IMG/VR virus record: IMGVR_UViG_3300042691_042003
Span: 182,082-246,081 of that record
Strand: one strand, 5' to 3'
Length of the DNA: 64,000 nt
The position numbers and the translations under genes were made by a program. Positions 10,006 through 62,467 of the stretch are shown in pieces. Within the stretch, counting starts at the first letter, position 1; each line of letters starts with the position of its first letter. The notes below the pieces were generated by a model. It had not been told where the DNA came from. It did not search any database and worked only from the letters and a program-made list of their open reading frames with translations.

Positions 10006-13596
<3,591 letters not shown>

Positions 13597-30490: not shown

Positions 30491-30492
30491 AT

Positions 30493-30526
30493 ACTTCTAT
30501 TTGGTTCGACTCCAAATGGAAGTACT
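30493..30526 (+). ncRNA. tRNA minihelix-like hairpin (acceptor + T arm only)
   Basis: ACTTCTA-TTTGG-TTCGACT-CCAAA-TGGAAGT-A-CT: 7+5 bp stem, canonical T loop, same ACT 3' trailer as local tRNAs. Confidence 0.55.
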
Positions 30527-30548
30527 AAGGATAAATAAAATAAATTCC

Positions 30549-35247: not shown

Positions 35248-36114
35248 ATGGCATCTACTAATGATTTAGTCTATTTTGTAAATGGTCAATTTGTTGACCG
35301 AGCAGGGAGACCTATCAGTCTTTCTCGATATCTTAGTGGAATAGAAAGTGTTAGTAATACCCCTGGACCACAAGGAGAAATAGGACCCACTGGAAGAGTT
35401 GGAACTACTGGTGCTACAGGTGTTACTGGTGAAAAAGGAGAAAAGGGTGATCCTGGGATTCCTGGACCTCAAGGTCCCAGAGGAATTGCAGGAAGTATTA
35501 TAAATAATATTACAGTTATTGGAGGATCCGGAGGTTCTGGATCCATAGGTCCTACTGGACCTCAAGGTTTACAAGGACCTACAGGACCTGGTGGAGGTGG
35601 TTCAGGATCTCAAGGTGCAACTGGTCCTACCGGAATTCAAGGTTTAGATGGTGCAACTGGTCCTACCGGTCCTTTTATTAATGCAATATATACAGGATTT
35701 ACTGGTCAAACTTCGGTAACCGTATTTCATTACAGTGGATATTATCCAATAGTTCAAGTAATAGACGAAAATTCTGAGATTTTCTTCCCTGATTTAATTA
35801 AACATAATTCTTTATTTGATTATACTGTAGGATTTGATATTTCTTCTACTGGTACTATTATTACTGGAGGAGGAAATACAGGAGGAAGTATTTTTAATAT
35901 ATCAGGAGGTCCTACAGGGATAGGGATTCAAGGCGCAACAGGAAATACAGGACCTACCGGATTGGACGGTTCAACTGGTCCTACAGGAATAGGAATTCAA
36001 GGCTCAACTGGACCTACGGGAATAGGAATTCAAGGAGTAACAGGTCCTACTGGAACTGGAACAGGAACTGGATCTGATGTAGGAACTAATTTATACCTAT
36101 TCTTTAATTACTAA
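35248..36114 (+). CDS. Collagen-like structural protein
   Basis: G-X-Y/GPT repeats; shares module with 10617-13406. Confidence 0.8.
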
Positions 36115-42025: not shown

Positions 42026-42205
42026 ATGGAAGAAAATATTGACATCCTCGAAGAATTAAATGTTGCCGAATCTATTTTAAAGATTGCTTCAAAGAATGGT
42101 TTAGAACCGGAAATATTTGTATTTGCTGTAAAAGCAATGAAAGAAAATCCTAATCTTTCTATAATTGAAGCAATGTACGAAGGATTTGATGAATGGATTA
42201 AATAA
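42026..42205 (+). CDS. Small hypothetical protein
   Basis: Start reassigned to ATG 42026 after TATAAATA. Confidence 0.5.
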   Translation: MEENIDILEELNVAESILKIASKNGLEPEIFVFAVKAMKENPNLSIIEAMYEGFDEWIK

Positions 42206-42702
42206 TGTTACACGGTCAAAAAGTAATTTTCGTTTCGATTGTAGATAATCAATCGAAAACTGTTTCGAATCTACGATACAGAATATGGCATCATGAAGTT
42301 TTGGTTAAAGATATTCTTAATCGAAAAAATGCAATTATCGGTAGAAAAACATACGAAATGACTCGGTGGAAAGGACCTAAAACCTGGATTCTTACTAGAA
42401 ATAAAAATCTTAAGAAACCTGGAGTAGGAATAATTCACGACATAGATGATCTTCATCTACATACTGAAGGAGATATTTTTGTTTTAGGTGGTTCTTCTCT
42501 TTTTAAAATTTTCGAAGAATATGTAGATGAAATTCATATGTATGTTCTAAATAATAAAGAAGGAAAAGAAGATTGGATATCTCTTAAGATGTCTAATTGG
42601 TTACCTAGAAATTACACAAACGAATATATTTGGTCATATGCTCATCTTCAAAGAAGAGAAGAAATTGATCCAATTGAACTTATTAAAAATTTATTTGAAT
42701 GA
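42205..42702 (+). CDS. Dihydrofolate reductase-like protein (divergent)
   Basis: NAIIGRKTYE, ILTRN, IFVLGGSSLF, VDEIHM. Confidence 0.7.
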   Translation: MLHGQKVIFVSIVDNQSKTVSNLRYRIWHHEVLVKDILNRKNAIIGRKTYEMTRWKGPKTWILTRNKNLKKPGVGIIHDIDDLHLHTEGDIFVLGGSSLFKIFEEYVDEIHMYVLNNKEGKEDWISLKMSNWLPRNYTNEYIWSYAHLQRREEIDPIELIKNLFE

Positions 42703-46728: not shown

Positions 46729-47166
46729 ATGCAAAAGAAAAAACACGCAAAATGGGAATCTCTGCTATTCCGTCCTGAACTTCCGGAAGGTTGGTCATGT
46801 CAAGAACAAATCGATAGACCAGGAGAAAGTTATATTACTTTCGTATGTTGGGGAAAAATACATCATAATGCTGAACCTACTAAATTATACATCATCTTCA
46901 ACGAATTCGAAGAATTCGAAAAAGGAAAAAGATTTCTAGTTCGAGGAGGAAGGAATATTAAACCTGAAGAAGGATTTAAGTTCTTTAAAGATATTAAAAC
47001 AGCTACAAATTATATAGTGTATCTTGCCGAATCTACTAACCGATGGTTAAAAGAAATAAATGATCCTAAATATATTGCCTCTTATAATTCTCATATTGCT
47101 AAGCAAGTTCGTGCTCAAGAAGAATATGATCGTAGAATGAAAGAAGCCTTTGAATCTGTTAACTAA
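46729..47166 (+). CDS. Hypothetical protein
   Basis: ORF track. Confidence 0.5.
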   Translation: MQKKKHAKWESLLFRPELPEGWSCQEQIDRPGESYITFVCWGKIHHNAEPTKLYIIFNEFEEFEKGKRFLVRGGRNIKPEEGFKFFKDIKTATNYIVYLAESTNRWLKEINDPKYIASYNSHIAKQVRAQEEYDRRMKEAFESVN

Positions 47167-47630
47167 TGAAAATTGCAATTCTTACCGAATCGTCTAAAGA
47201 AGGAAAGAATCAAATATTAGCACAATTTTGCTCTATTTATTGTGATAGTGTACTTACTAAAGCAAAAATAGATATTTATAATTTTTCTGCTTTCGAAAAT
47301 GTTTGGATTAATCATTATGACTCATTTATAATGATCGTACCCGAATGGAATGGATCGTTTCCTTTTACCGTAAAGAAGCTAATTGACGATTCTGGATATC
47401 CTTCTTTATTTCAAGATAAAGATATTCTCCTTATAGGAACTTCAGCTTCTTCGATGTCTAATATTATTGGAATTGAACAGCTAAATTACATTCTTCAATT
47501 TGTAGGAGCGAATGTATATAAGAAGAAAGTTTATATTCCTAATATAAGCAAAGACATGGATGTAGATCTTGAAGTTAGGTTATGTAAAACTATAAAGAAT
47601 TTCTTCAAAAAAAATTTTAAAGAAATTTAA
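47166..47630 (+). CDS. NADPH-dependent FMN reductase-like protein
   Basis: DSFIMIVPEWNGSFPFTVKKLID. Confidence 0.8.
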   Translation: MKIAILTESSKEGKNQILAQFCSIYCDSVLTKAKIDIYNFSAFENVWINHYDSFIMIVPEWNGSFPFTVKKLIDDSGYPSLFQDKDILLIGTSASSMSNIIGIEQLNYILQFVGANVYKKKVYIPNISKDMDVDLEVRLCKTIKNFFKKNFKEI

Positions 47631-47688: not shown

Positions 47689-49578
47689 ATGTCTGAATTA
47701 GAAAATCTATACTTGAAAGCCAAACGAACCTACTACGAAGGAAATCCGATTATGTCTGATTCAAAATTCGACGAACTCGAAGAAAAACTTAGATTTATGA
47801 ATTCTAAAGTAATTGAAATCGTAGGTTCTGAAGAATTAGAAAAAGACATAAAGCATCTTTCTGCAATGCTTTCTCTTCAAAAAATTCAAGTAAACGATCT
47901 TTCTGATAAAACGATTCCTATAACCAAATTTAAATCTTGGATTAAGAAAACCGAAGAACGATTTAATCATCTAATAGCCGAACCGAAATTCGATGGATCT
48001 TCTTGTAATCTAATTTACGATAACGGTAAACTTATTTCAGCTGCAACTCGAGGAAATGGATTAGAAGGAACAAATATTACCGATAAAATTTCATTAATCG
48101 TTCCTAAAGAAATTCAAACCGATTATCCAGGTTTAATCGAAATTCGAGGTGAAGTAATTATTAAAACGAAAACCTTCGAAGAAAAATATTCGAAAATTTA
48201 CAAAAACCCTCGTAACTTCGTTGCTGGAATTCTCGGTCGAGATGATATTTCTAATTGTATTCAAGATTTTGAATTCATTGCATTCGAACATAAATTCTAT
48301 TACGATGATATGATGGAATTTGGAAACGATTCTTTCGAATTTCTTCAAAATCTAGGATTTACTGTTCCTTCTTTCTTCGTAAAATTTAATTATCAAGAAT
48401 TCGAAAAAACCTTCGATTCATTTCTAGATTTTAGAATCAATAAATCCGAATATGGTCTCGATGGATTTGTAATTAAATATCCTTCTGATCTACGTAAATC
48501 TATTGGTGAAACCGGTCATCATCCCAAGTGGGCAATGGCAATCAAATTTCCTCCAATGGAATCAATTACTTATATCAAAAAAATTCAATGGAATCTAGGT
48601 CAATCCGGTGAATTTAAACCAATTGGTGTACTCGAACCTATCGATCTCGATGGTACTACAGTATCCAATGTAGCTTTACATAATCTCGGTTCTATTCAAA
48701 AACTAGGTTTATTCCCAGGTGCTAAAGTAACAATCGTAAAATCAGGTGATATTATTCCTATCGTAAAAAATGTAATCCAACCTAATTACGAATCAGATAT
48801 AACTAAACACCTACCAAATCATTGTTCAAATGATTGCAAAATCGAAATCCAAGGAATTCATTTAGTTTGTAACAATCCAAATTGCCAAGAACAACTAATT
48901 AGTCGATTAGGAATCGGTATCGGAACATTCGGTCTAGAAAATATCGGTGGTGCAACAATTGTAAAACTTTATAATGCAGGAATTCGTAAAATTTCTGATC
49001 TTTTTGATAGAACAAAATTTAATAAAGAATCTCTGATTAAATCAGGCCAATTCAAGCAAGGTCGTTCCCTTGATATTATATTTGAATCTTTCGAAAAACG
49101 TAAACCTATTACAATGATTCGAATAATTAATTCACTTGCATTTAAGAATGTCGGTTGGTCTACTTCTAAAGAAATTGCAAAAATATTCGAAAACGAAAAA
49201 CCTAATTTCTCAGGAAAATCTTACGCTGCTTATTCTCCTTTTCTAAACGAAAAATCTTCTGAATATCATTCAGTTCTTTCTTTTATTCAAATTTTAAAAC
49301 AAAACGGTTTTAAAATTGAATCAGAAATCGAAAATAAGATAAGTGAAAATGCAATAACTTATGAACTTACCGGTTCTCCCAAAGAATTTGGTTTTAAGAC
49401 TAAAGAAGAATTTATAAATAAACTAAAAGATTATGGATATCATCATACCGATCTTAATAAAGGCACTAATTATCTTATCACCGATGATCTTGAATCCTCT
49501 TCATCAAAAATGGCAAAAGCAAAAAAGTTAAATGTAACGATAGTTACATATTCACAAATTTTGGAATTGCTAAAATAA
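47689..49578 (+). CDS. ligA: NAD-dependent DNA ligase
   Basis: YYEGNPIMSD..FD, EPKFDG (KxDG), ATRGNGLEG, EIRGE, DGFVIK, PKWAMAIKF, C-C-C-C Zn, C-terminal BRCT. Confidence 0.95.
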   Translation: MSELENLYLKAKRTYYEGNPIMSDSKFDELEEKLRFMNSKVIEIVGSEELEKDIKHLSAMLSLQKIQVNDLSDKTIPITKFKSWIKKTEERFNHLIAEPKFDGSSCNLIYDNGKLISAATRGNGLEGTNITDKISLIVPKEIQTDYPGLIEIRGEVIIKTKTFEEKYSKIYKNPRNFVAGILGRDDISNCIQDFEFIAFEHKFYYDDMMEFGNDSFEFLQNLGFTVPSFFVKFNYQEFEKTFDSFLDFRINKSEYGLDGFVIKYPSDLRKSIGETGHHPKWAMAIKFPPMESITYIKKIQWNLGQSGEFKPIGVLEPIDLDGTTVSNVALHNLGSIQKLGLFPGAKVTIVKSGDIIPIVKNVIQPNYESDITKHLPNHCSNDCKIEIQGIHLVCNNPNCQEQLISRLGIGIGTFGLENIGGATIVKLYNAGIRKISDLFDRTKFNKESLIKSGQFKQGRSLDIIFESFEKRKPITMIRIINSLAFKNVGWSTSKEIAKIFENEKPNFSGKSYAAYSPFLNEKSSEYHSVLSFIQILKQNGFKIESEIENKISENAITYELTGSPKEFGFKTKEEFINKLKDYGYHHTDLNKGTNYLITDDLESSSSKMAKAKKLNVTIVTYSQILELLK

Positions 49579-49599
49579 ATATAAAAACACCTAATCTTA

Positions 49600-49944
49600 G
49601 TGAATACATTTAAGAAATTTTACGAATTTATCAACGAATCATTAGCATTTTTAACTCTCAATAAAACCATGAAAAACGAATTCATGAATAATATTGAGCT
49701 AAAAAACGATTTCGAAAATGCAAAAAGACAATTTTATATGAACGGCAATTTCCTTCTTACTCATATAGAAGGAGATAAATTCGAGTTAAGAACTAGATCT
49801 AATGTTCAATCCGAAGACTTAGACGGGATTATCGATTCTCATGTAAATACTACTACGGAAAGAATGAAATTTCGTAGAATAGGAAAACCGAAGACCGATA
49901 AAATTAAAGATAAAATTTGGATGGTTAAGGCAAAAATCGATTAA
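49600..49944 (+). CDS. Hypothetical with capsid-targeting-like N-terminus
   Basis: MNTFKKFYEFINES (GTG start). Confidence 0.55.
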   Translation: MNTFKKFYEFINESLAFLTLNKTMKNEFMNNIELKNDFENAKRQFYMNGNFLLTHIEGDKFELRTRSNVQSEDLDGIIDSHVNTTTERMKFRRIGKPKTDKIKDKIWMVKAKID

Positions 49945-49972: not shown

Positions 49973-50665
49973 ATGGAAAAATACTCTACTTTCGAAGAAG
50001 CCTTCTATTACATAAATAAACAAATCATAAATTGGCCTACATTCATAACAACATCTCGTATAGGTGATGTTCATGAAATATGTTCTCTTACATATACAGT
50101 CGAAGATCTCGGTTCTTATAAATTTAAGGATGAATCTTTAGGAAGACTTGATTATGATTATGCTGATACTTTTTATCGTTGGATGATTGACGGTTGTACC
50201 GATTCTACAGAAATTCTAGAAAAATATCCTAATACTTCTAGATTCATGGAAAAACCAAAATCTCCTGATCTACCTTCTAATTTTAACACCTTTTACGGTC
50301 CTAGAATTTTACAACAACTCCCTCATATCATTAAAGAATTAACTGCTAATCCTGATTCTCGTCGAGCAGTTATTTCTATTCTTGATAAAGATGATTTACT
50401 CCTCCTTGATAAAGATGAAACCTTAGAATTTCCTTGTTGTGATTCTGCAACATTCTTTATTAGAGGAGGAAAATTACATGTCCATCTTCATATGCGTTCT
50501 CAGAATATGGGTCAAGTACTTAAGCTTGACATGTATTTATGGGGTAGATTTACATGTGAATTAGCTGAAAACCTAAATATTGAAACCGGAAATTTTTTCT
50601 CTTCTGTTGTTTCTGCTCATGTGTTTACTAAAGATTTTGATTACCTTTCCAATTTTATAGAATGA
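49973..50665 (+). CDS. Thymidylate synthase homolog, dCMP hydroxymethylase-type
   Basis: YGPR, DSRRAVI, EFPCC catalytic Cys, MRSQNMGQVLKLD (Asp at pyrimidine-specificity position), SAHVF. Confidence 0.75.
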   Translation: MEKYSTFEEAFYYINKQIINWPTFITTSRIGDVHEICSLTYTVEDLGSYKFKDESLGRLDYDYADTFYRWMIDGCTDSTEILEKYPNTSRFMEKPKSPDLPSNFNTFYGPRILQQLPHIIKELTANPDSRRAVISILDKDDLLLLDKDETLEFPCCDSATFFIRGGKLHVHLHMRSQNMGQVLKLDMYLWGRFTCELAENLNIETGNFFSSVVSAHVFTKDFDYLSNFIE

Positions 50666-51960
50666 AAAAACCTCTAAACGTTTTTTATGCAGTACAAGTG
50701 TCTAATTTCACAACTAATGGAGATAAGTCCAAATGGTTGATTCGTAATGATGCTTGTATGAATATCTGTATCGGTATTGTCTCTTCAATACTTACCGAAT
50801 ATCCAAAAGATTTCCGATTTATTATTAAAGTTCCTCCTGTAGAAGATTGTGCAGATATTGATTCTCATAAGGATCTATTCGATGAAAAATATCTAGATAG
50901 AATTGAATTCTATGAAGATTTTATTCCTATTTCCCCTGTAATTAGTCGTTTTCATTTTGATATGAACACACATAAAGTTTTTGGTTCTAAAAAACTTGCT
51001 AATGTTGATGTTATGATTAACGATGAAAATACACATACTAAAAGCTGGAGAATATTCTTCGAAAATATCATTGGTAAAAGGATTCCAATGGTTTCGACTA
51101 ATTACTTTATGGATTCACCAATTTCTCCAAAATCGGATCCTAAGGTAAGATATTATGAAAGACAAATGGAATCACTTATATCTTCGGATATGTTTTCGTA
51201 TCCTGTAACTGCTGCTCTTAATGAAGCTCTCGAAGCTTATAATTTTCTATTTAAAGATGGAACGATCCTAGGAATTCCCACTGTTTGGAATATTGGTGCT
51301 TCTTTCGAAGAAATTAATAAGAAAAAAGTAACTAAGTCTCCAGGAAAGATTAAAATTTATTTTGGTAATCGAATTACCGATTCTGCTAATCGATACACTA
51401 ATTGGCATCTATTTGCTGAAGCTATCGGTAAACTTTCGGAAAGGATTGATCCTTCTCGCTTCACTGCAACGATTCTTAATCCTACAAAGAAAATTACTCC
51501 TGAACAACTCGACGAAATTTCAACTCTTTCTCGTGGATGTGTCGAAGTAGTTCCTAATTACAGTGATTTCAGTCGAGAAGATTATATCAATTTTATTAAC
51601 GAAGCACATATTTCTTGCAATCTATTTACTAATGAAGTACATGGTGGATTAACTCACGTAGAAGCTATGATGGCAGGTTGTATTCTTGTTGCTCCTAACG
51701 TTAATGATTATCTTTATAAATACGAAGATTCAGGAAAACTTTCAGATTATCCCTTTCTAATTGACACATATAATAAAAAGCTAGATATGGAATCTTTTGT
51801 AAGTAAACTCGAACTAGCCGTTAATACTGCTCAAAACAAGCAATCAATGGAAAAATATTCAGAAATGAATCGTGAACTTGCTTATAAATATGCATCATAT
51901 GAAATGTCTTCTCATATCATTGCAAAAGATCTTAAGAAACTAGCAAAGCTTTATAAATGA
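50662..51960 (+). CDS. GT-B fold glycosyltransferase (divergent)
   Basis: C-terminal FSREDYINFI...CNLF..E..GG...EAMMAGCILVAPN...Y. Confidence 0.7.
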   Translation: MKKPLNVFYAVQVSNFTTNGDKSKWLIRNDACMNICIGIVSSILTEYPKDFRFIIKVPPVEDCADIDSHKDLFDEKYLDRIEFYEDFIPISPVISRFHFDMNTHKVFGSKKLANVDVMINDENTHTKSWRIFFENIIGKRIPMVSTNYFMDSPISPKSDPKVRYYERQMESLISSDMFSYPVTAALNEALEAYNFLFKDGTILGIPTVWNIGASFEEINKKKVTKSPGKIKIYFGNRITDSANRYTNWHLFAEAIGKLSERIDPSRFTATILNPTKKITPEQLDEISTLSRGCVEVVPNYSDFSREDYINFINEAHISCNLFTNEVHGGLTHVEAMMAGCILVAPNVNDYLYKYEDSGKLSDYPFLIDTYNKKLDMESFVSKLELAVNTAQNKQSMEKYSEMNRELAYKYASYEMSSHIIAKDLKKLAKLYK

Positions 51961-52985
51961 ATATACTTGTAACAGGATCTGCAGGTTTCCTCGGTAATTT
52001 TGTCTGTAATTTCTTTCATGAAAAAGGACATAAGATTATAGGAATTGATAATTTATCTAGAAAAGGATCTCATCTTAATGCACAAAAACAGAAAGAAAAC
52101 TTTCTGTTTTTCTTTGGTGATATTTCTAATCCTTCTGATTTAAAATTTACTGAAGATCTAGATATTGATTGGATTATTGATTGTGCAGCTGAACCTTCTG
52201 TTCTTGCAGGAACCGACGGTCAATCTAAAGGTCTAATAGATAATAATCTCATTTCGACTATTAATCTTCTTGAAATTTGTGCCAAGAAAAAATGTGGATT
52301 TACTCTTATGAGCACTAGTAGAGTTTATTCGGTTAAACAACTTTCTAGTATTGAGATAATTAAGACTCCTACTAAATTCTTTTCTACCGTTCAAGTTGAT
52401 GAAGATTTTTCTACAAAACCTCCTGTTTCTCTTTATGGATCTACAAAGCTAACATCCGAATTATTAGCTTTAGAATATTCTAGTCTTTATCAATTCCCTG
52501 TATTTATTAATCGATGTGGTGTTATTGCAGGTGCAGGACAATTTGGTAAAATCGATCAAGGCGTTTTTTCGTATTGGATTTATTCTTGGATAAGAAAACA
52601 ACCTCTTAAATATTTTGGATTCGATGGAACCGGTCGACAAAGTCGAGATGTAATTCACCCTAAAGATATTTGTACAGTTTTAGAAAAACAAATTCAATTC
52701 GGTAAAATTGAAGAAGATCCTATTTATTGTTTGGGTGGTGGACATCAAAATTGTATGTCACTCTTAGAATTATCCCAATGGTGTAAAGAAAATATATCTT
52801 CTGATTATGAACCCGAATCAGTTCCAATCGACAGACCTTTTGATATTCCTGTATTTGTAATGGATACGAAAAAAGCTGAAAGGAGATGGAAATTTAAAAT
52901 TACGGTTTCAATAAAAGAAATTCTAAAAGAAATAAGAGATCATGCTAAAAATAACCCTGATTTTCTTGATTACCTTTATTCTTAA
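51957..52985 (+). CDS. NAD-dependent epimerase/dehydratase, CDP-paratose 2-epimerase (RfbE)-like
   Basis: TGSAGFLG, DNLSRKGS, AAEPSV, STSRVY, YGSTK, GQFGKIDQG, GRQSRD. Confidence 0.85.
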   Translation: MNILVTGSAGFLGNFVCNFFHEKGHKIIGIDNLSRKGSHLNAQKQKENFLFFFGDISNPSDLKFTEDLDIDWIIDCAAEPSVLAGTDGQSKGLIDNNLISTINLLEICAKKKCGFTLMSTSRVYSVKQLSSIEIIKTPTKFFSTVQVDEDFSTKPPVSLYGSTKLTSELLALEYSSLYQFPVFINRCGVIAGAGQFGKIDQGVFSYWIYSWIRKQPLKYFGFDGTGRQSRDVIHPKDICTVLEKQIQFGKIEEDPIYCLGGGHQNCMSLLELSQWCKENISSDYEPESVPIDRPFDIPVFVMDTKKAERRWKFKITVSIKEILKEIRDHAKNNPDFLDYLYS

Positions 52986-53002
52986 TTTACATATAATTAT
53001 AT

Positions 53003-53575
53003 ATGGCAAATCTAATTATACTCGAAGGTTTATCTAGAACCGGCAAATCGACCATTTGTAAATCTCTATCAGAAAAATTTAAACTACGAAATATTTCAAT
53101 AAAAAATAAAATGCCGGAAAACGTAAGTCTTCCGGATTTTTATCATGGAATTCATGTTGTTATGAATGAAATTTATCGTGAATTTCCTGAAGAAACTTTT
53201 ATTCTTGATCGTTCATTTCTTTCAGAATTGGTTTATTCAAAATTCTTCAATAGAACAACTCATCAAAAAGAAGATTCTATTATTTCTGATTTACTTTTCG
53301 ATAATAATTTTATTCTTGTTTATCTTAAGAATACTCATTCCGATTATCAAAACCGAGGACCTAAAGATAGAATTATTTATTCAAAAGAAGATTATGAAAA
53401 ACAAACTGATTTATTCGATTGGTTCTTTTCTACATATAAACAAAATATAGATACAGAATCTTGGCAAAATCGATTTATCGAATTAAATACATCGATAAAT
53501 TCTATTGAAGAATGCATCGAAAATATAGAACAAACAATGTCAAAAAATAATTTTTTAAAACAAATCGAAATATGA
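53003..53575 (+). CDS. Deoxynucleoside monophosphate kinase (thymidylate kinase-like)
   Basis: LIILEGLSRTGKST, ILDRSFLSELVY. Confidence 0.85.
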   Translation: MANLIILEGLSRTGKSTICKSLSEKFKLRNISIKNKMPENVSLPDFYHGIHVVMNEIYREFPEETFILDRSFLSELVYSKFFNRTTHQKEDSIISDLLFDNNFILVYLKNTHSDYQNRGPKDRIIYSKEDYEKQTDLFDWFFSTYKQNIDTESWQNRFIELNTSINSIEECIENIEQTMSKNNFLKQIEI

Positions 53576-54702
53576 AACAAAAAGTAGCAATTGTTACAGG
53601 ATCAAATGGACTTATCGGCTCTCAATCTGTTAAATTTCTTATTGAAAGGAATTATTTCGTTATCGGTATTGATAATGATATGCGATCTTATTTCTTCGGA
53701 CCTGAGGCTTCTACGAAGGAAAGTGAAGAAAAAATGGTAGAAGAATTTGGAAAATCTTTTAAGTCTTTTAACGTCGATATACGTGATGTTGAATCTCTTG
53801 AAGAAATTTTCGAAGCTTATGAAACCCCAGAATTCGATGTAGATCTTATTATCCATACTGCGGCACAACCTTCACATGATTGGGCTGCTAAAGAACCTCT
53901 TACTGATTTTACGGTAAATGCTCTAGGAACGGTTAATATGCTTGAATTAACTCGTCTTTATTTCCCTAAAGCTTCTTTTATTTTTACTTCAACAAACAAG
54001 GTTTACGGTGATACTCCCAACCGTTTGAATCTTATCGAAGAAGAAACTCGATATGACGCAGTTTCTAATCTCTCTCGTCGACCTATCGAAGTAGATGAAA
54101 CTATGTCCATCGATCATACCAAACATTCAATTTTTGGTGCTTCTAAGGTTGCAGCCGATGTTATGGTTCAAGAATATGGACGTTATTTTGGAATGAATAC
54201 CGTTGTTTTTCGAGGTGGATGTCTTACTGGTCCTAATCATGCAGGTGCCGAACTTCATGGATTTCTTTCTTATTTGATTAAATGTATTGTTAATCGTAAA
54301 CATTATAGGATCTTTGGATATAAAGGAAAACAAGTACGAGATAATATTCATTCATGGGATCTTGTAAATATGTTCTGGCATTATCATCTGAATCCTATCC
54401 CAGGTGCTGTCTATAATGCAGGTGGTGGAAGAGAAAATAGTACTTCTATTCTCGAAGCAATAGATACAGTTAATCGAATCCTTAAAGAAAAATTCCCTCA
54501 TAATTACGAAGATTGGAAAGATTATGAAATTCTAGATCAAAATCGTATAGGTGACCATCAATGGTATATTTCCGATCTTACTCAATTTAAGAAAGATTAT
54601 CCAGAGTGGCCTGGAATTACTATTTCTCTTGAAGAAACAATCAATCAAATTGTAGAATTTGAACTTCAAAAAAACGTAGAAACCGTTAATGAAAACAATT
54701 GA
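53572..54702 (+). CDS. NAD-dependent epimerase/dehydratase, RfbE-like (second)
   Basis: TGSNGLIG, HTAAQPSHDWA, TSTNKVYGD, FGASK, GKQVRDNIH. Confidence 0.88.
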   Translation: MKQKVAIVTGSNGLIGSQSVKFLIERNYFVIGIDNDMRSYFFGPEASTKESEEKMVEEFGKSFKSFNVDIRDVESLEEIFEAYETPEFDVDLIIHTAAQPSHDWAAKEPLTDFTVNALGTVNMLELTRLYFPKASFIFTSTNKVYGDTPNRLNLIEEETRYDAVSNLSRRPIEVDETMSIDHTKHSIFGASKVAADVMVQEYGRYFGMNTVVFRGGCLTGPNHAGAELHGFLSYLIKCIVNRKHYRIFGYKGKQVRDNIHSWDLVNMFWHYHLNPIPGAVYNAGGGRENSTSILEAIDTVNRILKEKFPHNYEDWKDYEILDQNRIGDHQWYISDLTQFKKDYPEWPGITISLEETINQIVEFELQKNVETVNENN

Positions 54703-55807
54703 TATAATTCAATTTACTCCTATTATTGGAGGTGAAACTACATTGACTAAAACCATGTCCGATTTTCTGTCGGACATGGGTTATTCTGTTAGAGTTATCC
54801 ATCCTTCGAAAAGTGGAAAGTGTATGAAGGATTGGTGCACTTTCGAAAGACAAAATTTTGTAAAGATTTCAGATTTTTCTGAATTTGTAAAAGATACAGA
54901 TATTCTTTTCTTTATTAATTCAATCCATCTTAAGAAACATAAAAAAGTAGAGGATCGTAATGAAGCTTTTGAGCAAGCTATTCCTATTTTTAGTTTCGAT
55001 AGTAAAAAAGTAATTTTCTATGAGCACGGAAGACATAGTAGTGACCTTTATGATTACCCTTCTATCTTTTCTATTTTATCAGAAAGAGGAAATAGAATCG
55101 TAGTTTTCACAAATACAAGAGATGTAATTCCTTATTATGAAAAGTTAGGTTATAACGCCTTTTTGATTAGACAACCTTTAGATCCTAAAAATTATCCTGA
55201 AATAAAGAGAGAAAAATCTGAAAAAGTTAAGCTTTCTTTTAATAGCAGATATACCTCAAATAAGAGACCTCAAAATATCCTTCCTTTCTTCAATAAATAT
55301 TTAGGAAAAGAAGAACCTTTTGAATTACATTTCAGAGGTAATGTTAGAGATAATGTTTCGGTTTGGTATAATCTATTTCATTACTTCGATGATCCAAAAA
55401 TTATTATGAATGGATATTTTGAACATTTCCATGAGATTTATAATAATATTGATTATTGTATTTATGGAGGATATACTACAAAATCCGAAAAAGGAAAGAT
55501 GGAATACTCTATGCTAGAACCTTTCTTTTATGGAATTCCTCTTATTGTAGAAAAAGAAGTAATTCAATATTTTAAATACGAAGAATATGGAATTTCTAAA
55601 GAAGATTTTCTAAAATCAGTTATTGTTTTGACTGAAGAAAATCTTGATAAGATAATTAAAGGAGAATTTGATTCTTCTTCTTTCGTAAAAAATGCAAAAT
55701 CTATTGTCGATGATTTTCTTCCTGAATCTATAAAAAGAAGGCTGGAAATAGGTCTAAATGGATTTGATTTACCTATAAAACCGAAAGAGATTTATACACT
55801 TTTTTAA
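54689..55807 (+). CDS. Putative GT-B glycosyltransferase
   Basis: GGETT N-terminal loop; FNSRYTSNKRP; E.G..EYSMLEPFFYGIPLIV. Confidence 0.65.
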   Translation: MKTIDIIQFTPIIGGETTLTKTMSDFLSDMGYSVRVIHPSKSGKCMKDWCTFERQNFVKISDFSEFVKDTDILFFINSIHLKKHKKVEDRNEAFEQAIPIFSFDSKKVIFYEHGRHSSDLYDYPSIFSILSERGNRIVVFTNTRDVIPYYEKLGYNAFLIRQPLDPKNYPEIKREKSEKVKLSFNSRYTSNKRPQNILPFFNKYLGKEEPFELHFRGNVRDNVSVWYNLFHYFDDPKIIMNGYFEHFHEIYNNIDYCIYGGYTTKSEKGKMEYSMLEPFFYGIPLIVEKEVIQYFKYEEYGISKEDFLKSVIVLTEENLDKIIKGEFDSSSFVKNAKSIVDDFLPESIKRRLEIGLNGFDLPIKPKEIYTLF

Positions 55808-55829
55808 GATAAATAAAAGAAAATCAGAA

Positions 55830-56732
55830 ATGTTTTTTAAGAAATTCGAAGAATTTGTTAATGAAAATGAAGAAAGCTATTCAATATTTTCATTTAATGA
55901 AGATGGTATTGTTGAAGCAAGTATGCCATTTCCCGTAGATGATAAAAAGGCAGATCATAAAATAGCTATCTACACATCAACCTACAACATCGGAGAGAAC
56001 ACTAGAGGAAGAGGTAATTATATTACTTATGAAAAGATGCTAGGTGACCTGATTGATTCCCTGAATGCTCAGAAGTATAAAAATTGGAAACTCTTTATTG
56101 TAGGGGATTGTTTTCAACCTGAGGAAGATCTTACAAAAATCCTTTCTGATAAGCTAGATAAGAAACAATATACATTTCATAATCTTTCTGAACCCGGTGA
56201 AAGAGGAAAAATCGATCCTCAATATCTAAGAAATTCAGGGGGAACAAAAGCGAGAAATAAAGCTATCTCACTTGCTAAATCTGAAGGATTCGAATATTTT
56301 GCAGCTATCGATCATGATGATGTTTGGAAGCCTGATCATCTTGAAAGTATGATGCAAGCTTTTCAGCAAGATCCAGATATTTCATTCGGATATCATAGAG
56401 CTTCTAGAGCTAGAGTAAAAGGAGGTAAATCAGGAGTTTATTATTGGGGTGCTGAAGGGAAAACACCTACACTTTTTTATGATGATGTTCCTGATAAAAT
56501 TATTGAAGCTCCTCATTCAGGTATCGTATGGCATGGTCCTTCATGTAAATGGCCTCAATATCGTACAGTTCCTCAAATGAGATCTGAAGCTCCTAAGAGA
56601 AATCGAATTATGGGAGCCGATGAGGATTTCATCAGACAAGCTACTGTTGGTTTAAGAGAAAATAAGAAGAAAGCCGTTTATGTTCCGAAATTAATAGTTA
56701 GACTTCGAAATGCCAAGGGTAAACTTCCTTAA
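55830..56732 (+). CDS. GT-A (GT2-like) glycosyltransferase with capsid-targeting-like N-terminus
   Basis: MFFKKFEEFVNE; YTSTYN, SLNAQKYKNWKLFIVGD, GGTKARNKAI, IDHDDVW (DxD), ADEDF. Confidence 0.8.
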   Translation: MFFKKFEEFVNENEESYSIFSFNEDGIVEASMPFPVDDKKADHKIAIYTSTYNIGENTRGRGNYITYEKMLGDLIDSLNAQKYKNWKLFIVGDCFQPEEDLTKILSDKLDKKQYTFHNLSEPGERGKIDPQYLRNSGGTKARNKAISLAKSEGFEYFAAIDHDDVWKPDHLESMMQAFQQDPDISFGYHRASRARVKGGKSGVYYWGAEGKTPTLFYDDVPDKIIEAPHSGIVWHGPSCKWPQYRTVPQMRSEAPKRNRIMGADEDFIRQATVGLRENKKKAVYVPKLIVRLRNAKGKLP

Positions 56733-56753: not shown

Positions 56754-56783
56754 AAGGCTGAAATGTGAATTTCAGCCTTTTTT
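56754..56783 (+). terminator. Rho-independent terminator
   Basis: AAGGCTGAAAT-GTGA-ATTTCAGCCTT + T tract. Confidence 0.85.
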
Positions 56784-57459: not shown

Positions 57460-57849
57460 ATGGCTATTCTACAACAAGAATTTCAATACGATCAATATCG
57501 AATGCTTATAGCATGTATCATGTTAAATCAAACAAGCAATAAGAATGTTCGACAAGTAATTTATACATTTTTCGATCGATGGCCTACACCTCAATCCGTT
57601 ATCGAAGCCGATCCTTCTGAAATCCGAGAACATATACGTCCTTTAGGTTTCTATAACATCAGAACTAATCGAATTATCAGATTTACTCAAGATTATTTAA
57701 CGAAGAAATTTAATCGAGCTTCTGAATTATATGGCATCGGAAAATATGCCGATGATTCATATGAAATTTTTATTCGAGGAAATCTAAACGTAAATCCAAC
57801 CGATAAAATCCTTCGTAGATATTTAAACGGTGAATTCATAGATCAATAA
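57460..57849 (+). CDS. HhH-GPD DNA glycosylase, MBD4-like
   Basis: MLIACIMLNQT, FF.RWPTP, PLGFYNIR, ELYGIGKYADDSYEIF; start reassigned to 57460. Confidence 0.8.
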   Translation: MAILQQEFQYDQYRMLIACIMLNQTSNKNVRQVIYTFFDRWPTPQSVIEADPSEIREHIRPLGFYNIRTNRIIRFTQDYLTKKFNRASELYGIGKYADDSYEIFIRGNLNVNPTDKILRRYLNGEFIDQ

Positions 57850-59207: not shown

Positions 59208-59234
59208 AAAGGAGAACAATTGTTCTCCTTTTTT
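59208..59234 (+). terminator. Palindromic terminator
   Basis: AAAGGAGAACAATTGTTCTCCTTT perfect 24-bp palindrome + T tract. Confidence 0.75.
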
Positions 59235-59246
59235 CATATAAATAAA

Positions 59247-59714
59247 ATGAATAAAGAAAGAACTAATTTCAAAATAGATCGATTCGTTGAAATCCTTCAA
59301 ACCATCTCTAATCTCTCTAATGCTTCAACTAAAAAAGTTGCATGCATGGCTTTACATAAAAATTTTACCAAAATTGCTTCATTTGGCTACAACGGTTCTT
59401 ATATGAATGCACCTGTTAATGATTTAACAGGAACTGAAGAAGAATCTCTCGAACCAGGAGAATCTGGTTTTATTCATGCTGAAGTTAATATGATTGCTAA
59501 ATTTAGAGAATTCGATCCTGAAAATTATATTATTCTTCTTACCCTTTCACCTTGTAAAATGTGTACAAAAATTCTTGTTAATTCAGGTTTTCGATTCGTC
59601 TATTGGATTGAAGATTATAGAGAACAAGATCATCTTCATATTTTCGATGAATGTAATGTTTCTTACGGAAATGTAAAAAAATTAAAAGAAGATTATAAAC
59701 TTTTTTCGAATTAG
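59247..59714 (+). CDS. dCMP deaminase-like protein
   Basis: GYNG, HAEVN, TLSPCKMC. Confidence 0.88.
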   Translation: MNKERTNFKIDRFVEILQTISNLSNASTKKVACMALHKNFTKIASFGYNGSYMNAPVNDLTGTEEESLEPGESGFIHAEVNMIAKFREFDPENYIILLTLSPCKMCTKILVNSGFRFVYWIEDYREQDHLHIFDECNVSYGNVKKLKEDYKLFSN

Positions 59715-60913: not shown

Positions 60914-62467
60914 GTGGGAAATTTTTCGAATAAATTAGATTTTAGAAATTTAAGAAAAAGGCCTCTCAGTTGGACTGAGATGGATAATATGTTTCAAAAA
61001 CCGAATGTTTGGCGTTCGGATGTTACATATGAACAAGGAATGGTTGTTTTATGGGATGATTCGGTTGCTCCGGTAGGAGATACAATAAATGGAGCTCTAT
61101 CTTTTTGGATTTGTCAACAAGATCACGTTTCATCTTTATCAAATATCCCTAGTGTTCCTAATCAATCTTATTGGAATCGAGTAGGAACTTCTACTTTAGT
61201 TAATAAAGGAGATACCGGACCAATGGGTCCTCAAGGTCCTACTGGAGCTACTGGTAGGACAGGACCTACTGGAATATCCATTACCGGACCTACTGGAGTT
61301 ACAGGGGGAACTGGTATGACTGGACCAACAGGAATTGCAGGACCACAAGGCCCTGCTGGTATAAAAGGAGATCAAGGTCTAAGAGGAGCTACAGGTGCTA
61401 CAATTGCAGGACCTACAGGATCTACTGGTGTTACAGGTGCTACTGGGGTTACTGGACCGATGGGGGTTACAGGGCCTTCAGGAGGACCTCTAGGACCTAC
61501 TGGTCCTACTGGAGTAACAGGTATTACTGGTGTTACAGGACCTACCTCACCCGGTCCTACTGGTGAGACAGGTCCTACTGGAGTAACTGGTCCTACCGGG
61601 ATACAAGGTGCTACTGGAGTAACAGGATTAAGAGGACCTACTGGTGGTATATCTTCTACTCCTGTTCAATTATTAGATATTTTTTCCGATATAGCCACTT
61701 CAGTTCCTCAAGCAGGAAACAGATATATGTGGTATAATTTATTATCTACAGGAGTAACTTCTTCCATATTTACTATAGATAATTCTCAAGGAGCAACCTT
61801 TGGAACTAGAATAACTTTCTTAAGAGAAGGAAAATATTATCTTTCTGCTAGAACTGCATTTTCAATAAATACTGGGGTCTTTACTACTATAAGGGGATAT
61901 TTTGGTTATGCAAATAGTACTGGGAATGAATTTGATTTCAAAGGTAATCCTTCTTATGGATTAGAAAATTATCTTTATTTAAGTCCTGGATCAAGAGATT
62001 CTTTTGAAGTATCTGGAGTTCTAGATGTAAATAGTTCATGGGTAACCGGACCTTCAGGACCTTATAAACTTTACGTTAAAATGGAGAATCAATCTCCTGG
62101 AGGAGCAAGTGCTGCTATAATCCCTTATGCTACCAGATTATCTATTATAAGTATGGATGGTGGTGTAGGTCCTGCAGGATCTAATAATTTTACAACATAT
62201 TTTTCTACAGGAACTACATATTCAGTACCTTCATTTAATTTTTCAAAATATATAGGAGTTTCAGGAACAACTTCGATATATTTACATAGTGGAGTTGATG
62301 GTGAAGCTTTAATTGTTAAAGATGAAAAGGGAATCGCATCCTCTTCGAATATTTTTTTGTATCCGGTTTTGGGAGAAGGAATTGAAGCTGGATCTAGCGC
62401 TGTAATAAATACCGATTATGGATCTCTTAATTTAGTAAGAAGAGGTTCTACTTGGTGGAAAATTTAA
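60914..62467 (+). CDS. Collagen-like (GPT/GVT) fibre protein
   Basis: Long G-X-T tract; C-terminal LIVKDEKG.A...I......IE....[10 protein letters not shown]. Confidence 0.8.

What the first reader, a model, noticed from the sequence alone, without database searches (positions are those of the whole stretch)
49973..56732. Candidate novel DNA hypermodification cluster: dCMP-type TS homolog, dNMP kinase, two RfbE-like epimerases and three glycosyltransferases
Seven contiguous, mostly overlapping genes. The TS homolog has Asp at the position equivalent to E. coli TS Asn177 (RSQNMGQVLKLD), the established signature of dCMP-specific enzymes such as T4 gp42. It also has Asn where TS/gp42 keep the folate-contacting Asp (RSxD), hinting at altered chemistry. 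A dedicated dNMP kinase sits between two CDP-paratose/tyvelose-epimerase-like SDRs, flanked by two GT-B and one GT-A enzymes. The inference is a modified cytosine (hmC or hydroxy-C) decorated with a phage-synthesised rare sugar, possibly multi-sugar, unlike T4 glucosylation. A dCMP deaminase and an MBD4-like glycosylase lie nearby.
Basis: partly seen in the sequence, partly recalled or inferred. Interest (0 to 1): 0.82.

Follow-up and report, generated by a model that had tools for sequence, protein, structure and literature searches.

The report
Phage 5-hydroxycytosine DNA glycosylation cluster
An uncultured 246-kb aquatic phage carries a tight gene cluster that most likely replaces cytosine in its DNA with 5-hydroxycytosine and hangs sugars on it, a DNA-protection strategy described only in 2025-26, built here with sugar enzymes not seen in any cultured phage.

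Summary
In detail: seven co-directional, mostly overlapping genes at 49973-56732 encode a thymidylate-synthase (TS) homolog, a GT-B glycosyltransferase, an SDR, a TMP-kinase-like kinase, a second SDR, a second GT-B and a GT2.

- **TS homolog.** It is not a gp42-type hydroxymethylase. It is 52% identical over its full length to solved phage enzymes and to the RB69 gp48/DLP3 gp80 family, shown experimentally to be flavin- and O2-dependent 5-hydroxy-dCMP synthases. It carries their full signature (L143E, D169N, N177D, Cys146).
- **Kinase.** It is homologous to the kinase of the RB69 cluster.
- **First GT-B.** It sits directly behind a D169N-type TS in 42 of 48 distinct metagenomic loci.
- **What is known.** The kind of system, glycosylated 5-hydroxycytosine, is already published.
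- **What is new.**
  - There are no arabinose or galactofuranose genes.
  - Three glycosyltransferases have no detectable sequence relative in cultured phages.
  - Two tyvelose-epimerase-like SDRs both fail that family's defining features; one belongs to a large Tyr-to-Phe clade.
  - A syntenic phage FMN reductase could feed the hydroxylase.
  - At least 13 cluster architectures occur among relatives.
- **Limits.** The sugar is not identified, and modified DNA is not shown.

The parts
47166..47630 (+). NAD(P)H-dependent FMN reductase (154 aa). Candidate supplier of reduced FMN to the hydroxylase; accessory, inferred.
   Evidence: Pfam PF03358, 3.7e-7, 30.3 bits, above the curated cut-off of 24. 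In the ESM Atlas, 93 of the 100 nearest clusters carry FMN_red. Present upstream in 19 of 21 distinct related loci with at least 7 kb of upstream flank. No homolog in GenBank phages or the PDB by sequence.
49600..49944 (+). Conserved 114-aa ORF of unknown function, directly upstream of the TS homolog.
   Evidence: 46-64% identical orthologs occupy the same position in most relatives. It is absent where the TS belongs to the divergent lineage (L014, L020). No Pfam, PHROG or Atlas assignment.
49973..50665 (+). 5-hydroxy-dCMP synthase (TS-fold, flavin/O2-dependent dCMP 5-hydroxylase).
   Evidence: PDB 9iqu/9iqc/9ir2, E 2e-74 over residues 4-229. About 52% identity to Straboviridae RB69 gp48-type proteins. 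Alignments A3 and A5 show Cys146, R126, R127, R166 and S167 kept, with L143E, D169N and N177D, and a shortened C-terminus. In the tree, all D169N rows form one group set apart from ThyA/gp42 by a long branch, and the two Straboviridae rows fall inside the same subgroup as the window's TS. Function of the family: PMC13326640.
50662..51960 (+). GT-B glycosyltransferase (432 aa). Proposed base-proximal DNA glycosyltransferase acting on 5-hydroxycytosine.
   Evidence: AlphaFold2 pLDDT 90.6. Foldseek hits GlgM, BshA, PimA and sucrose-phosphate synthase, E to 2e-13. In 43 of 48 distinct loci a TS homolog lies in the flank. All 43 carry the E/N/D signature, and 42 end within 91 bp of this gene's start. 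No tblastn hit in 50,697 GenBank phage records. No profile similarity to the RB69-type first arabinosyltransferase.
51957..52985 (+). Extended SDR 1 (342 aa), a nucleotide-sugar-modifying enzyme of unresolved specificity.
   Evidence: PF01370, 1.2e-32. Best PDB hit is CDP-tyvelose 2-epimerase 1orr, 5e-25. Canonical YGSTK, but TSR in place of the TyvE TNK segment. No NCBIfam equivalog cut-off reached. Present in 8 of 26 related loci.
53003..53575 (+). TMP-kinase-like P-loop nucleotide kinase (190 aa). Proposed 5-hydroxy-dCMP kinase.
   Evidence: phrog_761, 1.1e-15. hhalign of the family (A7) against the Straboviridae cluster kinases of RB69 gp45 type (A8) gives probability 97.9%, E 6e-13. Present in 24 of 26 related loci.
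53572..54702 (+). Extended SDR 2 (376 aa), an atypical TyvE-like enzyme with Phe in place of the catalytic Tyr. It is the conserved sugar enzyme of the cluster.
   Evidence: PF01370, 4.8e-35. PDB 9rl0 and 1orr, 3e-32 and 1e-29. The motif is FGASK instead of YxxxK in all 120 closest homologs and in 105 of the 150 best 50%-identity cluster representatives. Relatives are fused to GT11, GT2, WecG or methyltransferase domains. Present in 23 of 26 related loci at 53-89% identity.
54689..55807 (+). GT-B glycosyltransferase (372 aa). Proposed chain-extending or second DNA glycosyltransferase.
   Evidence: AlphaFold2 pLDDT 88.5. Foldseek hits BshA, PimA and sucrose-phosphate synthase, and also the T4 DNA alpha-glucosyltransferase (1y6f, 1xv5, 1y8z; E about 4e-9, TM 0.57-0.66). 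Only 22 homologs in 5.8 billion clustered proteins. None in GenBank phages. Present in 6 of 26 related loci.
55830..56732 (+). GT-A (family 2) glycosyltransferase (300 aa). Proposed further sugar addition.
   Evidence: PF00535, 2.2e-13. DHD motif at residues 161-163. Present in 13 of 26 related loci, in part only 31-34% identical.
56754..56779 (+). Terminator-like hairpin followed by a T-run; likely end of the transcription unit.
   Evidence: 11-bp stem followed by TTTTATTA, 22 nt after the GT2 stop codon.

Best explanation
The cluster is a pathway for glycosylated 5-hydroxycytosine in the phage's own DNA. It is the same kind of system as the arabinosyl-5-hydroxycytosine of RB69/DLP3/HY126 and the hexosyl-5-hydroxycytosine of Rhizobium phage RL38J1, but built with different sugar enzymes.

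Proposed mechanism. Only sequence, fold and synteny were tested here; every biochemical step is inferred.
1. The TS-fold enzyme (49973-50665) hydroxylates dCMP at C5 using FMN and O2. This rests on a strong family assignment.
2. The syntenic phage FMN reductase (47166-47630) may deliver reduced flavin. This is weakly inferred.
3. The TMP-kinase-like kinase (53003-53575) phosphorylates 5-hydroxy-dCMP. Host enzymes complete the triphosphate, and the phage polymerase incorporates it in place of dC. The dCMP deaminase at 59220-59714 helps to drain dCMP.
4. After replication, the 432-aa GT-B, which is translationally coupled to the hydroxylase, attaches the first sugar to the 5-OH in DNA.
5. The 372-aa GT-B and the GT2 add further sugars, giving a di- or tri-saccharide or a mixture.
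6. The two SDRs tailor host NDP-hexoses into the donor sugar or sugars. Context in relatives points weakly to GDP-linked or 6-deoxy-hexose chemistry: a GDP-mannose 4,6-dehydratase next to SDR2, plus GT11 neighbours and GT11 fusions.

The expected effect is resistance to restriction and CRISPR nucleases.
For: TS homolog:
- E 2e-74 over its full length to phage structures 9iqu/9iqc/9ir2.
- About 52% identity to the RB69 gp48/DLP3 gp80-type proteins of Straboviridae, against 26% to T4 gp42 and 23% to ThyA.
- The L143E, D169N and N177D signature with the catalytic Cys and phosphate-binding Arg/Ser retained.
- In the tree, all D169N rows group apart from ThyA/gp42 and the Straboviridae rows fall inside the same subgroup as the window's TS.
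- PMC13326640 shows that gp48, gp80 and nine further diverse D169N homologs make 5hodC in vivo. It also shows that the oxygen comes from O2 and that FMN is bound.

Shared module:
- The order TS, GT-B, TMPK-like kinase is the order in RB69 (gp48, gp46:47, gp45) and RL38J1 (gp216, gp215, gp214).
- The kinases are homologous (hhalign 97.9%).

Coupling of the glycosyltransferase to the hydroxylase:
- 43 of 48 distinct loci have a TS homolog in the flank, and all 43 carry the signature.
- 42 of them lie within 91 bp of the GT-B. This includes a TS lineage only 29% identical to the window's.

Other support:
- Genes overlap by 4-14 nt.
- The fold matches of the two GT-Bs are the same PDB entries reported for the proven DLP3/RB69 DNA arabinosyltransferases (3mbo, 2gej, 6kih). 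The 372-aa protein also matches the T4 DNA alpha-glucosyltransferase.
- The cluster lies within a block of DNA replication, repair and nucleotide-metabolism genes: ligase, guanylate-kinase-like, DHFR, dCMP deaminase, MBD4-like glycosylase.
- The FMN reductase is syntenic in 19 of 21 loci.
Against: - There is no chemical evidence. The phage is uncultured and known only from metagenomes.
- No T4 gp56-type dCTPase and no nucleotidyltransferase were found in the 64-kb window. The other 182 kb of the contig could not be read.
- SDR2 also occurs, next to a GT11 homolog, in a 635-kb phage with no TS within 9 kb. Its sugar pathway is therefore not exclusive to DNA modification.
- 5 of 48 GT-B loci show no TS in the available flank.
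- The GT-Bs have no sequence-level homology to the proven DNA arabinosyltransferases.
- SDR2 lacks the canonical catalytic Tyr.
- In RB69, the step 5hodCMP to 5hodCDP was demonstrated for the gp1-type kinase, not for the cluster kinase.
- FMN reductase synteny cannot be separated from shared ancestry. Every related locus with a TS has the D169N type.
Confidence: 0.72

Rival explanations
1. The TS homolog makes 5-hydroxycytosine nucleotides, but the SDRs and glycosyltransferases are auxiliary glycan genes acting on something else. Candidates are virion proteins such as the collagen-like fibres, or the host envelope. The DNA would then carry bare 5hoC or another small group.
For: SDR2 plus a GT11 homolog occur in a megaphage without a nearby TS. 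Relatives of SDR2 are fused to ordinary polysaccharide-type GT and methyltransferase domains. Cyanophages carry similar SDRs as auxiliary genes. The window encodes several collagen-like fibre proteins.
Against: The 432-aa GT-B is glued to a D169N TS in 42 of 48 loci, across two TS lineages. The nucleotide kinase sits between the sugar genes, and the reading frames overlap. The same interleaving is seen in the proven RB69/DLP3 clusters. Bare 5hoC is an oxidative lesion (background knowledge: excised by Nth/Nei-type glycosylases), so leaving it undecorated seems costly.
Confidence: 0.12
2. The TS homolog is a T4 gp42-like folate-dependent dCMP hydroxymethylase, and the cluster glycosylates 5-hydroxymethylcytosine.
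For: N177D and an acidic residue at position 143 are shared with gp42. The overall logic resembles T-even phages.
Against: The protein has D169N, whereas gp42 keeps Asp. It is 26% identical to gp42 but 52% identical to the hydroxylase family. It is shorter than ThyA at the C-terminus. Every D169N homolog tested in PMC13326640 produced 5hodC.
Confidence: 0.03
3. The TS homolog is an ordinary or inactive thymidylate synthase, and the gene neighbourhood is a coincidental juxtaposition of nucleotide-metabolism and polysaccharide genes.
For: Pfam and NCBIfam name it only as thymidylate synthase, at scores far below the equivalog cut-offs. A DHFR-like gene lies 7 kb upstream.
Against: N177D disfavours dUMP as substrate. 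The folate-contacting Asp169 is lost. The arrangement recurs in dozens of independent contigs from many samples. The catalytic Cys and the phosphate-binding residues are strictly conserved.
Confidence: 0.03

Closest known systems
Arabinosyl-5-hydroxycytosine system of Straboviridae (RB69 gp45-gp55, DLP3 gp76-gp83, HY126 Afh genes; PMC13326640)
   Same: A D169N/N177D/L143E TS-fold 5hodCMP synthase, 52% identical. A GT-B gene lies immediately downstream. A homologous TMPK-like kinase is present (hhalign 97.9%). Additional GT-B enzymes extend the glycan. The fold matches of the GTs are the same PDB entries.
   Different: There is no arabinose-5-phosphate isomerase, no kinase/uridylyltransferase, no HAD phosphatase and no U32-like protein. 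No homolog of the Straboviridae genes used as queries (g050 U32, g053, AraT1) was found by tblastn in the window. Instead there are two TyvE-like SDRs and a GT2. The glycosyltransferases are not sequence-homologous. An FMN reductase is syntenic. The host genome is a 246-kb uncultured aquatic phage, not a T4-like phage.
Hexosyl (Gal-Glc-Glc) 5-hydroxycytosine of Rhizobium phage RL38J1 / Pootjesviridae (PMC13326640)
   Same: The gene order is TS (gp216), GT (gp215), kinase (gp214). There are three glycosyltransferases. One phage-encoded nucleotide-sugar tailoring enzyme acts on a host NDP-hexose rather than a full de novo sugar pathway.
   Different: The tailoring enzyme there is a UDP-galactopyranose mutase; here it is SDRs. 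In RL38J1 the GTs are scattered over the genome; here they are contiguous.
T4 glucosyl-5-hydroxymethylcytosine (gp42, gp1, gp56, alpha- and beta-glucosyltransferases)
   Same: The logic is the same: a TS-fold enzyme modifies dCMP before replication, a kinase follows, and DNA is glycosylated after replication. The 372-aa GT-B resembles T4 alpha-GT in fold.
   Different: The chemistry differs: a flavin/O2 hydroxylase rather than a folate hydroxymethylase. The sugar is linked directly through the C5 oxygen. No gp56 homolog is present in the window.
CDP-tyvelose 2-epimerase (TyvE/RfbE; PDB 1orr, 9rl0; PMC13098431)
   Same: It is the best solved sequence relative of both SDRs. Both are extended SDRs with an NAD-binding glycine motif. 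SDR2 keeps the TNK segment.
   Different: SDR1 has TSR instead of TNK and lacks VAM. SDR2 has Phe for the catalytic Tyr164 and lacks VAM. Identity is only about 25-30%. No CDP-sugar genes are nearby.

Membership tests
[quoted passage not shown] | TS fold with the catalytic Cys146 and the phosphate-binding Arg126/Arg127/Arg166/Ser167 | tested here: met
   These columns are invariant in alignments A3 and A5. Pfam PF00303, 5e-12.
[quoted passage not shown] | Asn at the ThyA Asp169 position, the published diagnostic residue | tested here: met
   RSQN aligns to RSCD of ThyA and RSND of gp42. The diagnostic is described in PMC13326640.
[quoted passage not shown] | Asp at Asn177 (dCMP specificity) and an acidic residue at Leu143 | tested here: met
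   LKLD gives D177. LEFPC gives E143.
[quoted passage not shown] | Close full-length similarity to experimentally characterised members | tested here: met
   PDB 9iqu/9iqc, E 2e-74 over residues 4-229. About 52% identity to gp48/gp80-type proteins. In the tree it shares a subgroup with the two Straboviridae rows, apart from ThyA and gp42.
[quoted passage not shown] | FMN binding and O2-dependent hydroxylation of dCMP | not testable with these tools
   This needs expression and LC-MS or an 18O2 experiment.
Glycosyl-5-hydroxycytosine DNA hypermodification gene cluster | Glycosyltransferase gene adjacent to the 5hodCMP synthase gene | tested here: met
   The GT-B start overlaps the TS stop by 4 nt. 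The adjacency holds in 42 of 48 distinct loci.
Glycosyl-5-hydroxycytosine DNA hypermodification gene cluster | Cluster-associated TMPK-like nucleotide kinase homologous to RB69 gp45/DLP3 gp78 | tested here: met
   hhalign probability 97.9%, E 6e-13. BLASTP 26% identity, E 2e-6.
Glycosyl-5-hydroxycytosine DNA hypermodification gene cluster | First glycosyltransferase homologous to the known ara-GT (RB69 gp46:47 / DLP3 gp79) | tested here: not met
   No BLASTP or profile-profile similarity. Only the GT-B fold is shared.
Glycosyl-5-hydroxycytosine DNA hypermodification gene cluster | dCTP-excluding enzyme (dCTPase) in the genome | tested here: inconclusive
   No tblastn hit of T4 gp56 in the window and no MazG-like Pfam hit among about 40 ORFs scanned. 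About 182 kb of the contig is outside the window, and its DNA could not be read.
Glycosyl-5-hydroxycytosine DNA hypermodification gene cluster | Virion DNA contains glycosylated 5hodC replacing dC | not testable with these tools
   The phage is uncultured. Only assembled contigs were available.
CDP-tyvelose 2-epimerase (TyvE/RfbE) | SDR catalytic triad Thr124-Tyr164-Lys168 | tested here: not met
   SDR2 has FGASK, that is Tyr to Phe, in all 120 close homologs. SDR1 keeps YGSTK.
CDP-tyvelose 2-epimerase (TyvE/RfbE) | TNK and VAM substrate-positioning segments. N125A and K126A are inactive in TaTyvE (PMC13098431). | tested here: not met
   SDR1 has STSRVY (TSR) and EPSV. SDR2 has STNKVY (TNK kept) but QPSH instead of QVAM.
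CDP-tyvelose 2-epimerase (TyvE/RfbE) | Score above a curated equivalog threshold for any named sugar-nucleotide enzyme | tested here: not met
   The best NCBIfam hits are GalE at 87 bits (cut-off 262) and RmlB at 96 bits (cut-off 365).

The most novel reading that the evidence does not exclude
This aquatic jumbo-phage lineage runs a self-contained two-component flavin system: a phage FMN reductase paired with a TS-fold dCMP hydroxylase. It decorates 5-hydroxycytosine with an oligosaccharide containing a rare sugar, possibly a GDP-derived 6-deoxyhexose. That sugar would be made by a previously uncharacterised Tyr-less (FxxxK) clade of TyvE-like SDRs. The glycosyltransferase and sugar genes behind a fixed hydroxylase/GT/kinase/SDR core are swapped like O-antigen cassettes, with at least 13 architectures seen. 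This would give 'DNA serotypes' that diversify under pressure from modification-dependent host nucleases.
Probability: 0.3. Interest if true: 0.75.

Novelty: new variant of a known kind. Interest (0 to 1): 0.55.

Why it matters
Glycosylated 5-hydroxycytosine was established only in 2025-26, in T4-like and Rhizobium phages, with arabinose or Gal/Glc as the sugars. Its discoverers predicted that other sugars would be found on the same base.

This cluster is a concrete, widespread candidate for that. About 56 distinct loci were recovered from freshwater, plankton, aquaculture and Tara Oceans contigs.

It offers several things to specialists:
- New DNA glycosyltransferase families with no sequence relative in cultured phages.
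- An uncharacterised SDR clade lacking the canonical catalytic tyrosine.
- A possible dedicated flavin reductase for the unusual TS-fold hydroxylase.
- A natural series of cassette variants in which to study how DNA glycans diversify.

In practical terms, such DNA would resist many restriction enzymes and could bias metagenomic library preparation and nanopore base-calling.

Tried and rejected
- **Megablast of the cluster against GenBank phages:** no match.
- **tblastn of both GT-Bs and of the FMN reductase against phages:** no match.
- **phmmer of both GT-Bs, the GT2 and the FMN reductase against PDB sequences:** no match.
- **BLASTP and hhalign of the GT-Bs against the RB69-type first arabinosyltransferase, and against each other:** no significant similarity. 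Homology to the known ara-GT is therefore rejected and only the fold is shared.
- **tblastn of selected proteins against the window:** the queries were T4 gp56, T4 beta-GT, phiR1-RT AraT1, phiR1-RT g053, and U32-like proteins from phiR1-RT (g050) and L020. Nothing was found. E. coli ThyA and T4 gp42 hit only the one TS homolog.
- **NCBIfam naming of the SDRs:** no equivalog threshold was reached, so no sugar was assigned.
- **orf114:** no family, no Atlas neighbour above noise, and no MazG-like motif seen.
- **Sigma-70 promoter scan:** fewer sites than in shuffled sequence (59 against 73), so it was not used. Only the terminator-like hairpin after GT2 was kept.
- **Read laying on four runs:** only short low-depth contigs, with strain-level differences. 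The run labelled RNA is probably DNA, so there is no evidence on expression or modification. Two roughly 295-nt 'joints' have short sides and were not interpreted.
- **Identifying the phage's taxonomy or host from large window proteins:** only distant hits to cyanophage, Acinetobacter and Flavobacterium phage genes.
- **FMN reductase linkage:** whether it tracks the hydroxylase specifically could not be tested, because every related locus with a TS has a D169N-type TS.

Full report
**Observation.**
- 49973-50665 (230 aa)
- 50662-51960 (432 aa)
- 51957-52985 (342 aa)
- 53003-53575 (190 aa)
- 53572-54702 (376 aa)
- 54689-55807 (372 aa)
- 55830-56732 (300 aa)

Four junctions overlap by 4-14 nt and the other two gaps are 17 and 22 nt. 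A terminator-like hairpin with an 11-bp stem and a T-run at 56754-56779 follows the last gene.

Pfam, PHROGs and NCBIfam confirm four classes of protein: a thymidylate-synthase (TS) homolog, two extended SDRs of the epimerase/dehydratase family, a TMP-kinase-like P-loop kinase and a family-2 glycosyltransferase. The 432-aa and 372-aa proteins have no family or PDB sequence hit. With alignments of metagenomic homologs they fold confidently, at pLDDT 90.6 and 88.5. Both are GT-B/GT4-like by Foldseek, matching GlgM, BshA, PimA and sucrose-phosphate synthase. The 372-aa model also matches the T4 DNA alpha-glucosyltransferase.

**What the TS homolog is.** tblastn against GenBank phages gives about 52% identity over the full length to a protein of T4-like phages. 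These include phiR1-RT g047, Acinetobacter phage proteins and 'RB69ORF048c'. The PDB holds phage 'thymidylate synthase' structures 9iqu/9iqc/9ir2 that match at E 2e-74 over residues 4-229. By contrast, T4 gp42 and E. coli ThyA are 26% and 23% identical over part of the length.

Lee et al. (NAR 2026, PMC13326640) showed the following:
- RB69 gp48 and DLP3 gp80 convert dCMP to 5-hydroxy-dCMP.
- The oxygen comes from O2.
- The enzymes bind FMN.
- Asn at the ThyA Asp169 position, together with N177D and an acidic residue at L143, is diagnostic.
- Nine further diverse D169N homologs all made 5hodC in vivo.

They also cite a crystal structure of the HY126 homolog with bound flavin. I infer, but cannot verify, that the 9iq*/9ir2 entries are that work.

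My alignment shows that the window protein has E143, N169 and D177. It keeps Cys146 and Arg126/Arg127/Arg166/Ser167, and its C-terminus is shortened. A maximum-likelihood tree separates all D169N proteins from ThyA/gp42 by a long branch. The two Straboviridae proteins included (phiR1-RT g047, AB-Navy71_077) fall inside the same subgroup as the window's TS.

**The shared module.** In phiR1-RT and RB69 the order is hydroxylase, first arabinosyltransferase (a GT-B), then a TMPK-like kinase. RL38J1 has the same order (gp216, gp215, gp214). In the window, the hydroxylase is followed by the 432-aa GT-B, and the kinase lies two genes further on.

Profile-profile comparison shows that the window-type kinases and the Straboviridae cluster kinases are homologous (97.9%, E 6e-13). 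The GT-B is only a positional and fold analogue of the arabinosyltransferase; there is no sequence or profile similarity.

**Comparative genomics.**
- The window comes from IMGVR_UViG_3300042691_042003, a 246,081-bp contig.
- The phage occurs in several freshwater, plankton and aquaculture metagenomes.
- It has no close cultured relative.
- Scans of viral and metagenome contigs with the GT-B alignment gave 67 loci with 56 distinct GT-B sequences.

Of the 48 distinct loci with at least 900 bp upstream, 43 contain a TS homolog. All 43 carry the E/N/D signature, and 42 end within 91 bp of the GT-B start. This includes loci whose TS is only 29% identical to the window's but still D169N (L014 and L020).

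Downstream, among 26 loci with at least 5.5 kb of flank:

| Gene | Loci with it |
|---|---|
| Kinase | 24 |
| SDR2 | 23 |
| GT2 | 13 |
| SDR1 | 8 |
| 372-aa GT-B | 6 |

Thirteen different architectures occur. The inserts include:
- a GT11 (L007)
- a GDP-mannose 4,6-dehydratase directly after SDR2 (L013, L033)
- unrelated 422-427-aa proteins in the slot of the 372-aa GT-B
- a DegT aminotransferase fragment (L022)
- a U32-like protein homologous to phiR1-RT g050, the counterpart of RB69 gp50 (34% identity)
- a KdsA-like enzyme (L019)

The window's own architecture (SDR1, kinase, SDR2, GT-B372, GT2) is shared by four distinct loci. Two more have it with the dehydratase added. A fixed core with swappable sugar and GT cassettes is what one expects of a glycan under diversifying selection.

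**The SDRs.** TaTyvE uses the triad Thr124/Tyr164/Lys168 and needs the TNK and VAM segments (PMC13098431).
- SDR1 keeps YxxxK but has TSR in place of TNK and lacks VAM.
- SDR2 keeps TNK but has Phe where the catalytic Tyr should be.

The Phe is present in all 120 closest homologs. It is also present in 105 of the 150 best 50%-identity cluster representatives from an exhaustive search. So this is a large natural clade, not a defect.

Members of the clade are fused to GT11, to GT2 plus methyltransferase, to WecG/TagA or to methyltransferase domains. In a 635-kb uncultured phage, an SDR2 homolog (62% identical, also Phe) is followed by a GT11 homolog with no TS nearby. SDR2 is thus a bona fide glycan-pathway enzyme working hand in hand with transferases. 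The recurrent GT11 and GDP-mannose dehydratase neighbours hint at GDP-linked or 6-deoxyhexose chemistry. TyvE enzymes are also known to interconvert GDP-glucose and GDP-mannose (PMC12188384). This remains a lead; the sugar is not identified.

**A possible extra component.** The 154-aa ORF at 47166-47630 is an NAD(P)H-dependent FMN reductase. Its Pfam score is above the curated cut-off, and 93 of the 100 nearest Atlas clusters carry FMN_red. It is kept 2-6 kb upstream of the hydroxylase in 19 of 21 loci with enough flank. It has no detectable sequence homolog in GenBank phages by tblastn.

Because the hydroxylase uses FMN and O2, a dedicated reductase would make a two-component monooxygenase-like pair. 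Such a reductase is not mentioned in the main text of PMC13326640. The evidence is synteny only. It cannot be separated from common descent, because every related locus with a TS has a D169N-type TS.

**Mechanism, and what is shown versus inferred.** Shown here are the gene content, folds, signatures, homologies and co-occurrence statistics. The following steps are inferred from published family properties:
1. dCMP to 5hodCMP.
2. Phosphorylation by the cluster kinase. In RB69 the step was demonstrated for the gp1-type kinase, not the cluster kinase.
3. Incorporation into DNA.
4. Post-replicative attachment of a first sugar by the 432-aa GT-B.
5. Extension by the 372-aa GT-B and the GT2.
6. Donor tailoring by the SDRs.

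Evidence against, or still missing:
- No chemistry has been done.
- No dCTPase or nucleotidyltransferase is in the window.
- The remaining 182 kb of the contig is unreadable here.
- 5 of 48 loci have no TS in the available flank.
- SDR2 also occurs outside TS contexts.

**Verdict.** The underlying kind of system is already described, so this is a new variant of a known kind rather than a new kind. It remains worthwhile for several reasons:
- It extends glycosyl-5-hydroxycytosine to a widespread uncultured aquatic jumbo-phage lineage.
- It brings glycosyltransferase families with no sequence relative in cultured phages.
- It exposes an uncharacterised Tyr-less SDR clade.
- It suggests a phage flavin reductase partner for the hydroxylase.
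- It shows cassette-like diversification of the glycan genes.

Noticed in passing
window 57460-57849 (+): A 129-aa stand-alone MBD4-type HhH-GPD glycosylase. It matches the MBD4 glycosylase domain in the PDB at E 2e-24 over residues 3-121, and the GIGKY..DD active-site region is kept. At 75-80% identity it is one of the most conserved genes of the block in most relatives (56% in L014). Its role in a phage with presumed 5hoC DNA is unexplained. Repair of deaminated modified C is one possibility.
   Followed up: partly
window 47166-47630 (+): A phage-encoded NAD(P)H-dependent FMN reductase, syntenic with the flavin-dependent hydroxylase in 19 of 21 related loci. No homolog is found in GenBank phage records. 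It may be a dedicated reductase partner.
   Followed up: partly
window 53572-54702 (+); proteins P0143-P0412: SDR2 belongs to a large clade of TyvE-like extended SDRs with Phe replacing the catalytic Tyr (HS-x-F-G-x-SK). The Phe is present in 105 of the 150 best 50%-identity cluster representatives. Some members are fused to GT11, GT2, WecG or methyltransferase domains. The catalytic base and the reaction are unknown.
   Followed up: partly
L011 (LR745206.1, 634,780-bp uncultured phage) 8998-10104 and 10101-10922: An SDR2 homolog (62% identical, Phe-type) is directly followed by a GT11-family homolog within a run of co-directional, mostly ~220-410-aa ORFs. No TS homolog lies within 9 kb.
   Followed up: partly
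L014 9192-10004; L020 7367-8107 and 8117-9187: A second, divergent lineage of D169N/N177D/L143E TS homologs, 29% identical to the window's, is also linked to the GT-B family. In L020 it is followed by a U32-peptidase-like protein 34% identical to phiR1-RT g050 (the RB69 gp50 counterpart), and the cluster ends with a UDG-family glycosylase.
   Followed up: partly
L019 / L062 (about 4900-10130): A variant locus has SDR2, UDG, the GT-B, a U32-like protein and a KdsA-like DAHP_synth_1 enzyme next to a family-B DNA polymerase. No TS is present in the available flank. This may involve a Kdo-type or other 3-deoxy sugar.
   Followed up: no
window 49578-49600, compared with L007 8205-8894 and L013 5625-6317: The window lacks a roughly 229-aa ORF of unknown function that sits between the ligase and orf114 in its closest relatives. 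One relative has a GT2_4-family protein in that slot.
   Followed up: no
window 54753-54779: A perfect 11-bp-stem palindrome lies inside the 5' end of the 372-aa GT-B gene. The scan flags it as terminator-like on both strands. Its significance is unknown.
   Followed up: no
window 10617-13406, 35248-36114, 60914-62467: Three collagen-repeat tail-fibre-like proteins match many PHROG tail-fibre families. They would be alternative acceptors if the glycosyltransferases act on proteins.
   Followed up: no
window 27960-29270, 30459-31391, 41053-42018, 42205-42702: Auxiliary and repair genes. They comprise a PurB-like adenylosuccinate lyase, a protein 54% identical to the 'tRNA ligase' of Prochlorococcus phage P-SSM2, a UvdE UV endonuclease and a DHFR-like protein. 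No canonical ThyA is present in the window.
   Followed up: no
window 51870-52165 and 54017-54314: Contigs of two DNA runs show joints skipping about 295 nt inside SDR1 and SDR2. The flanking matches are short (27-35 nt). These are probably assembly or strain artefacts.
   Followed up: no
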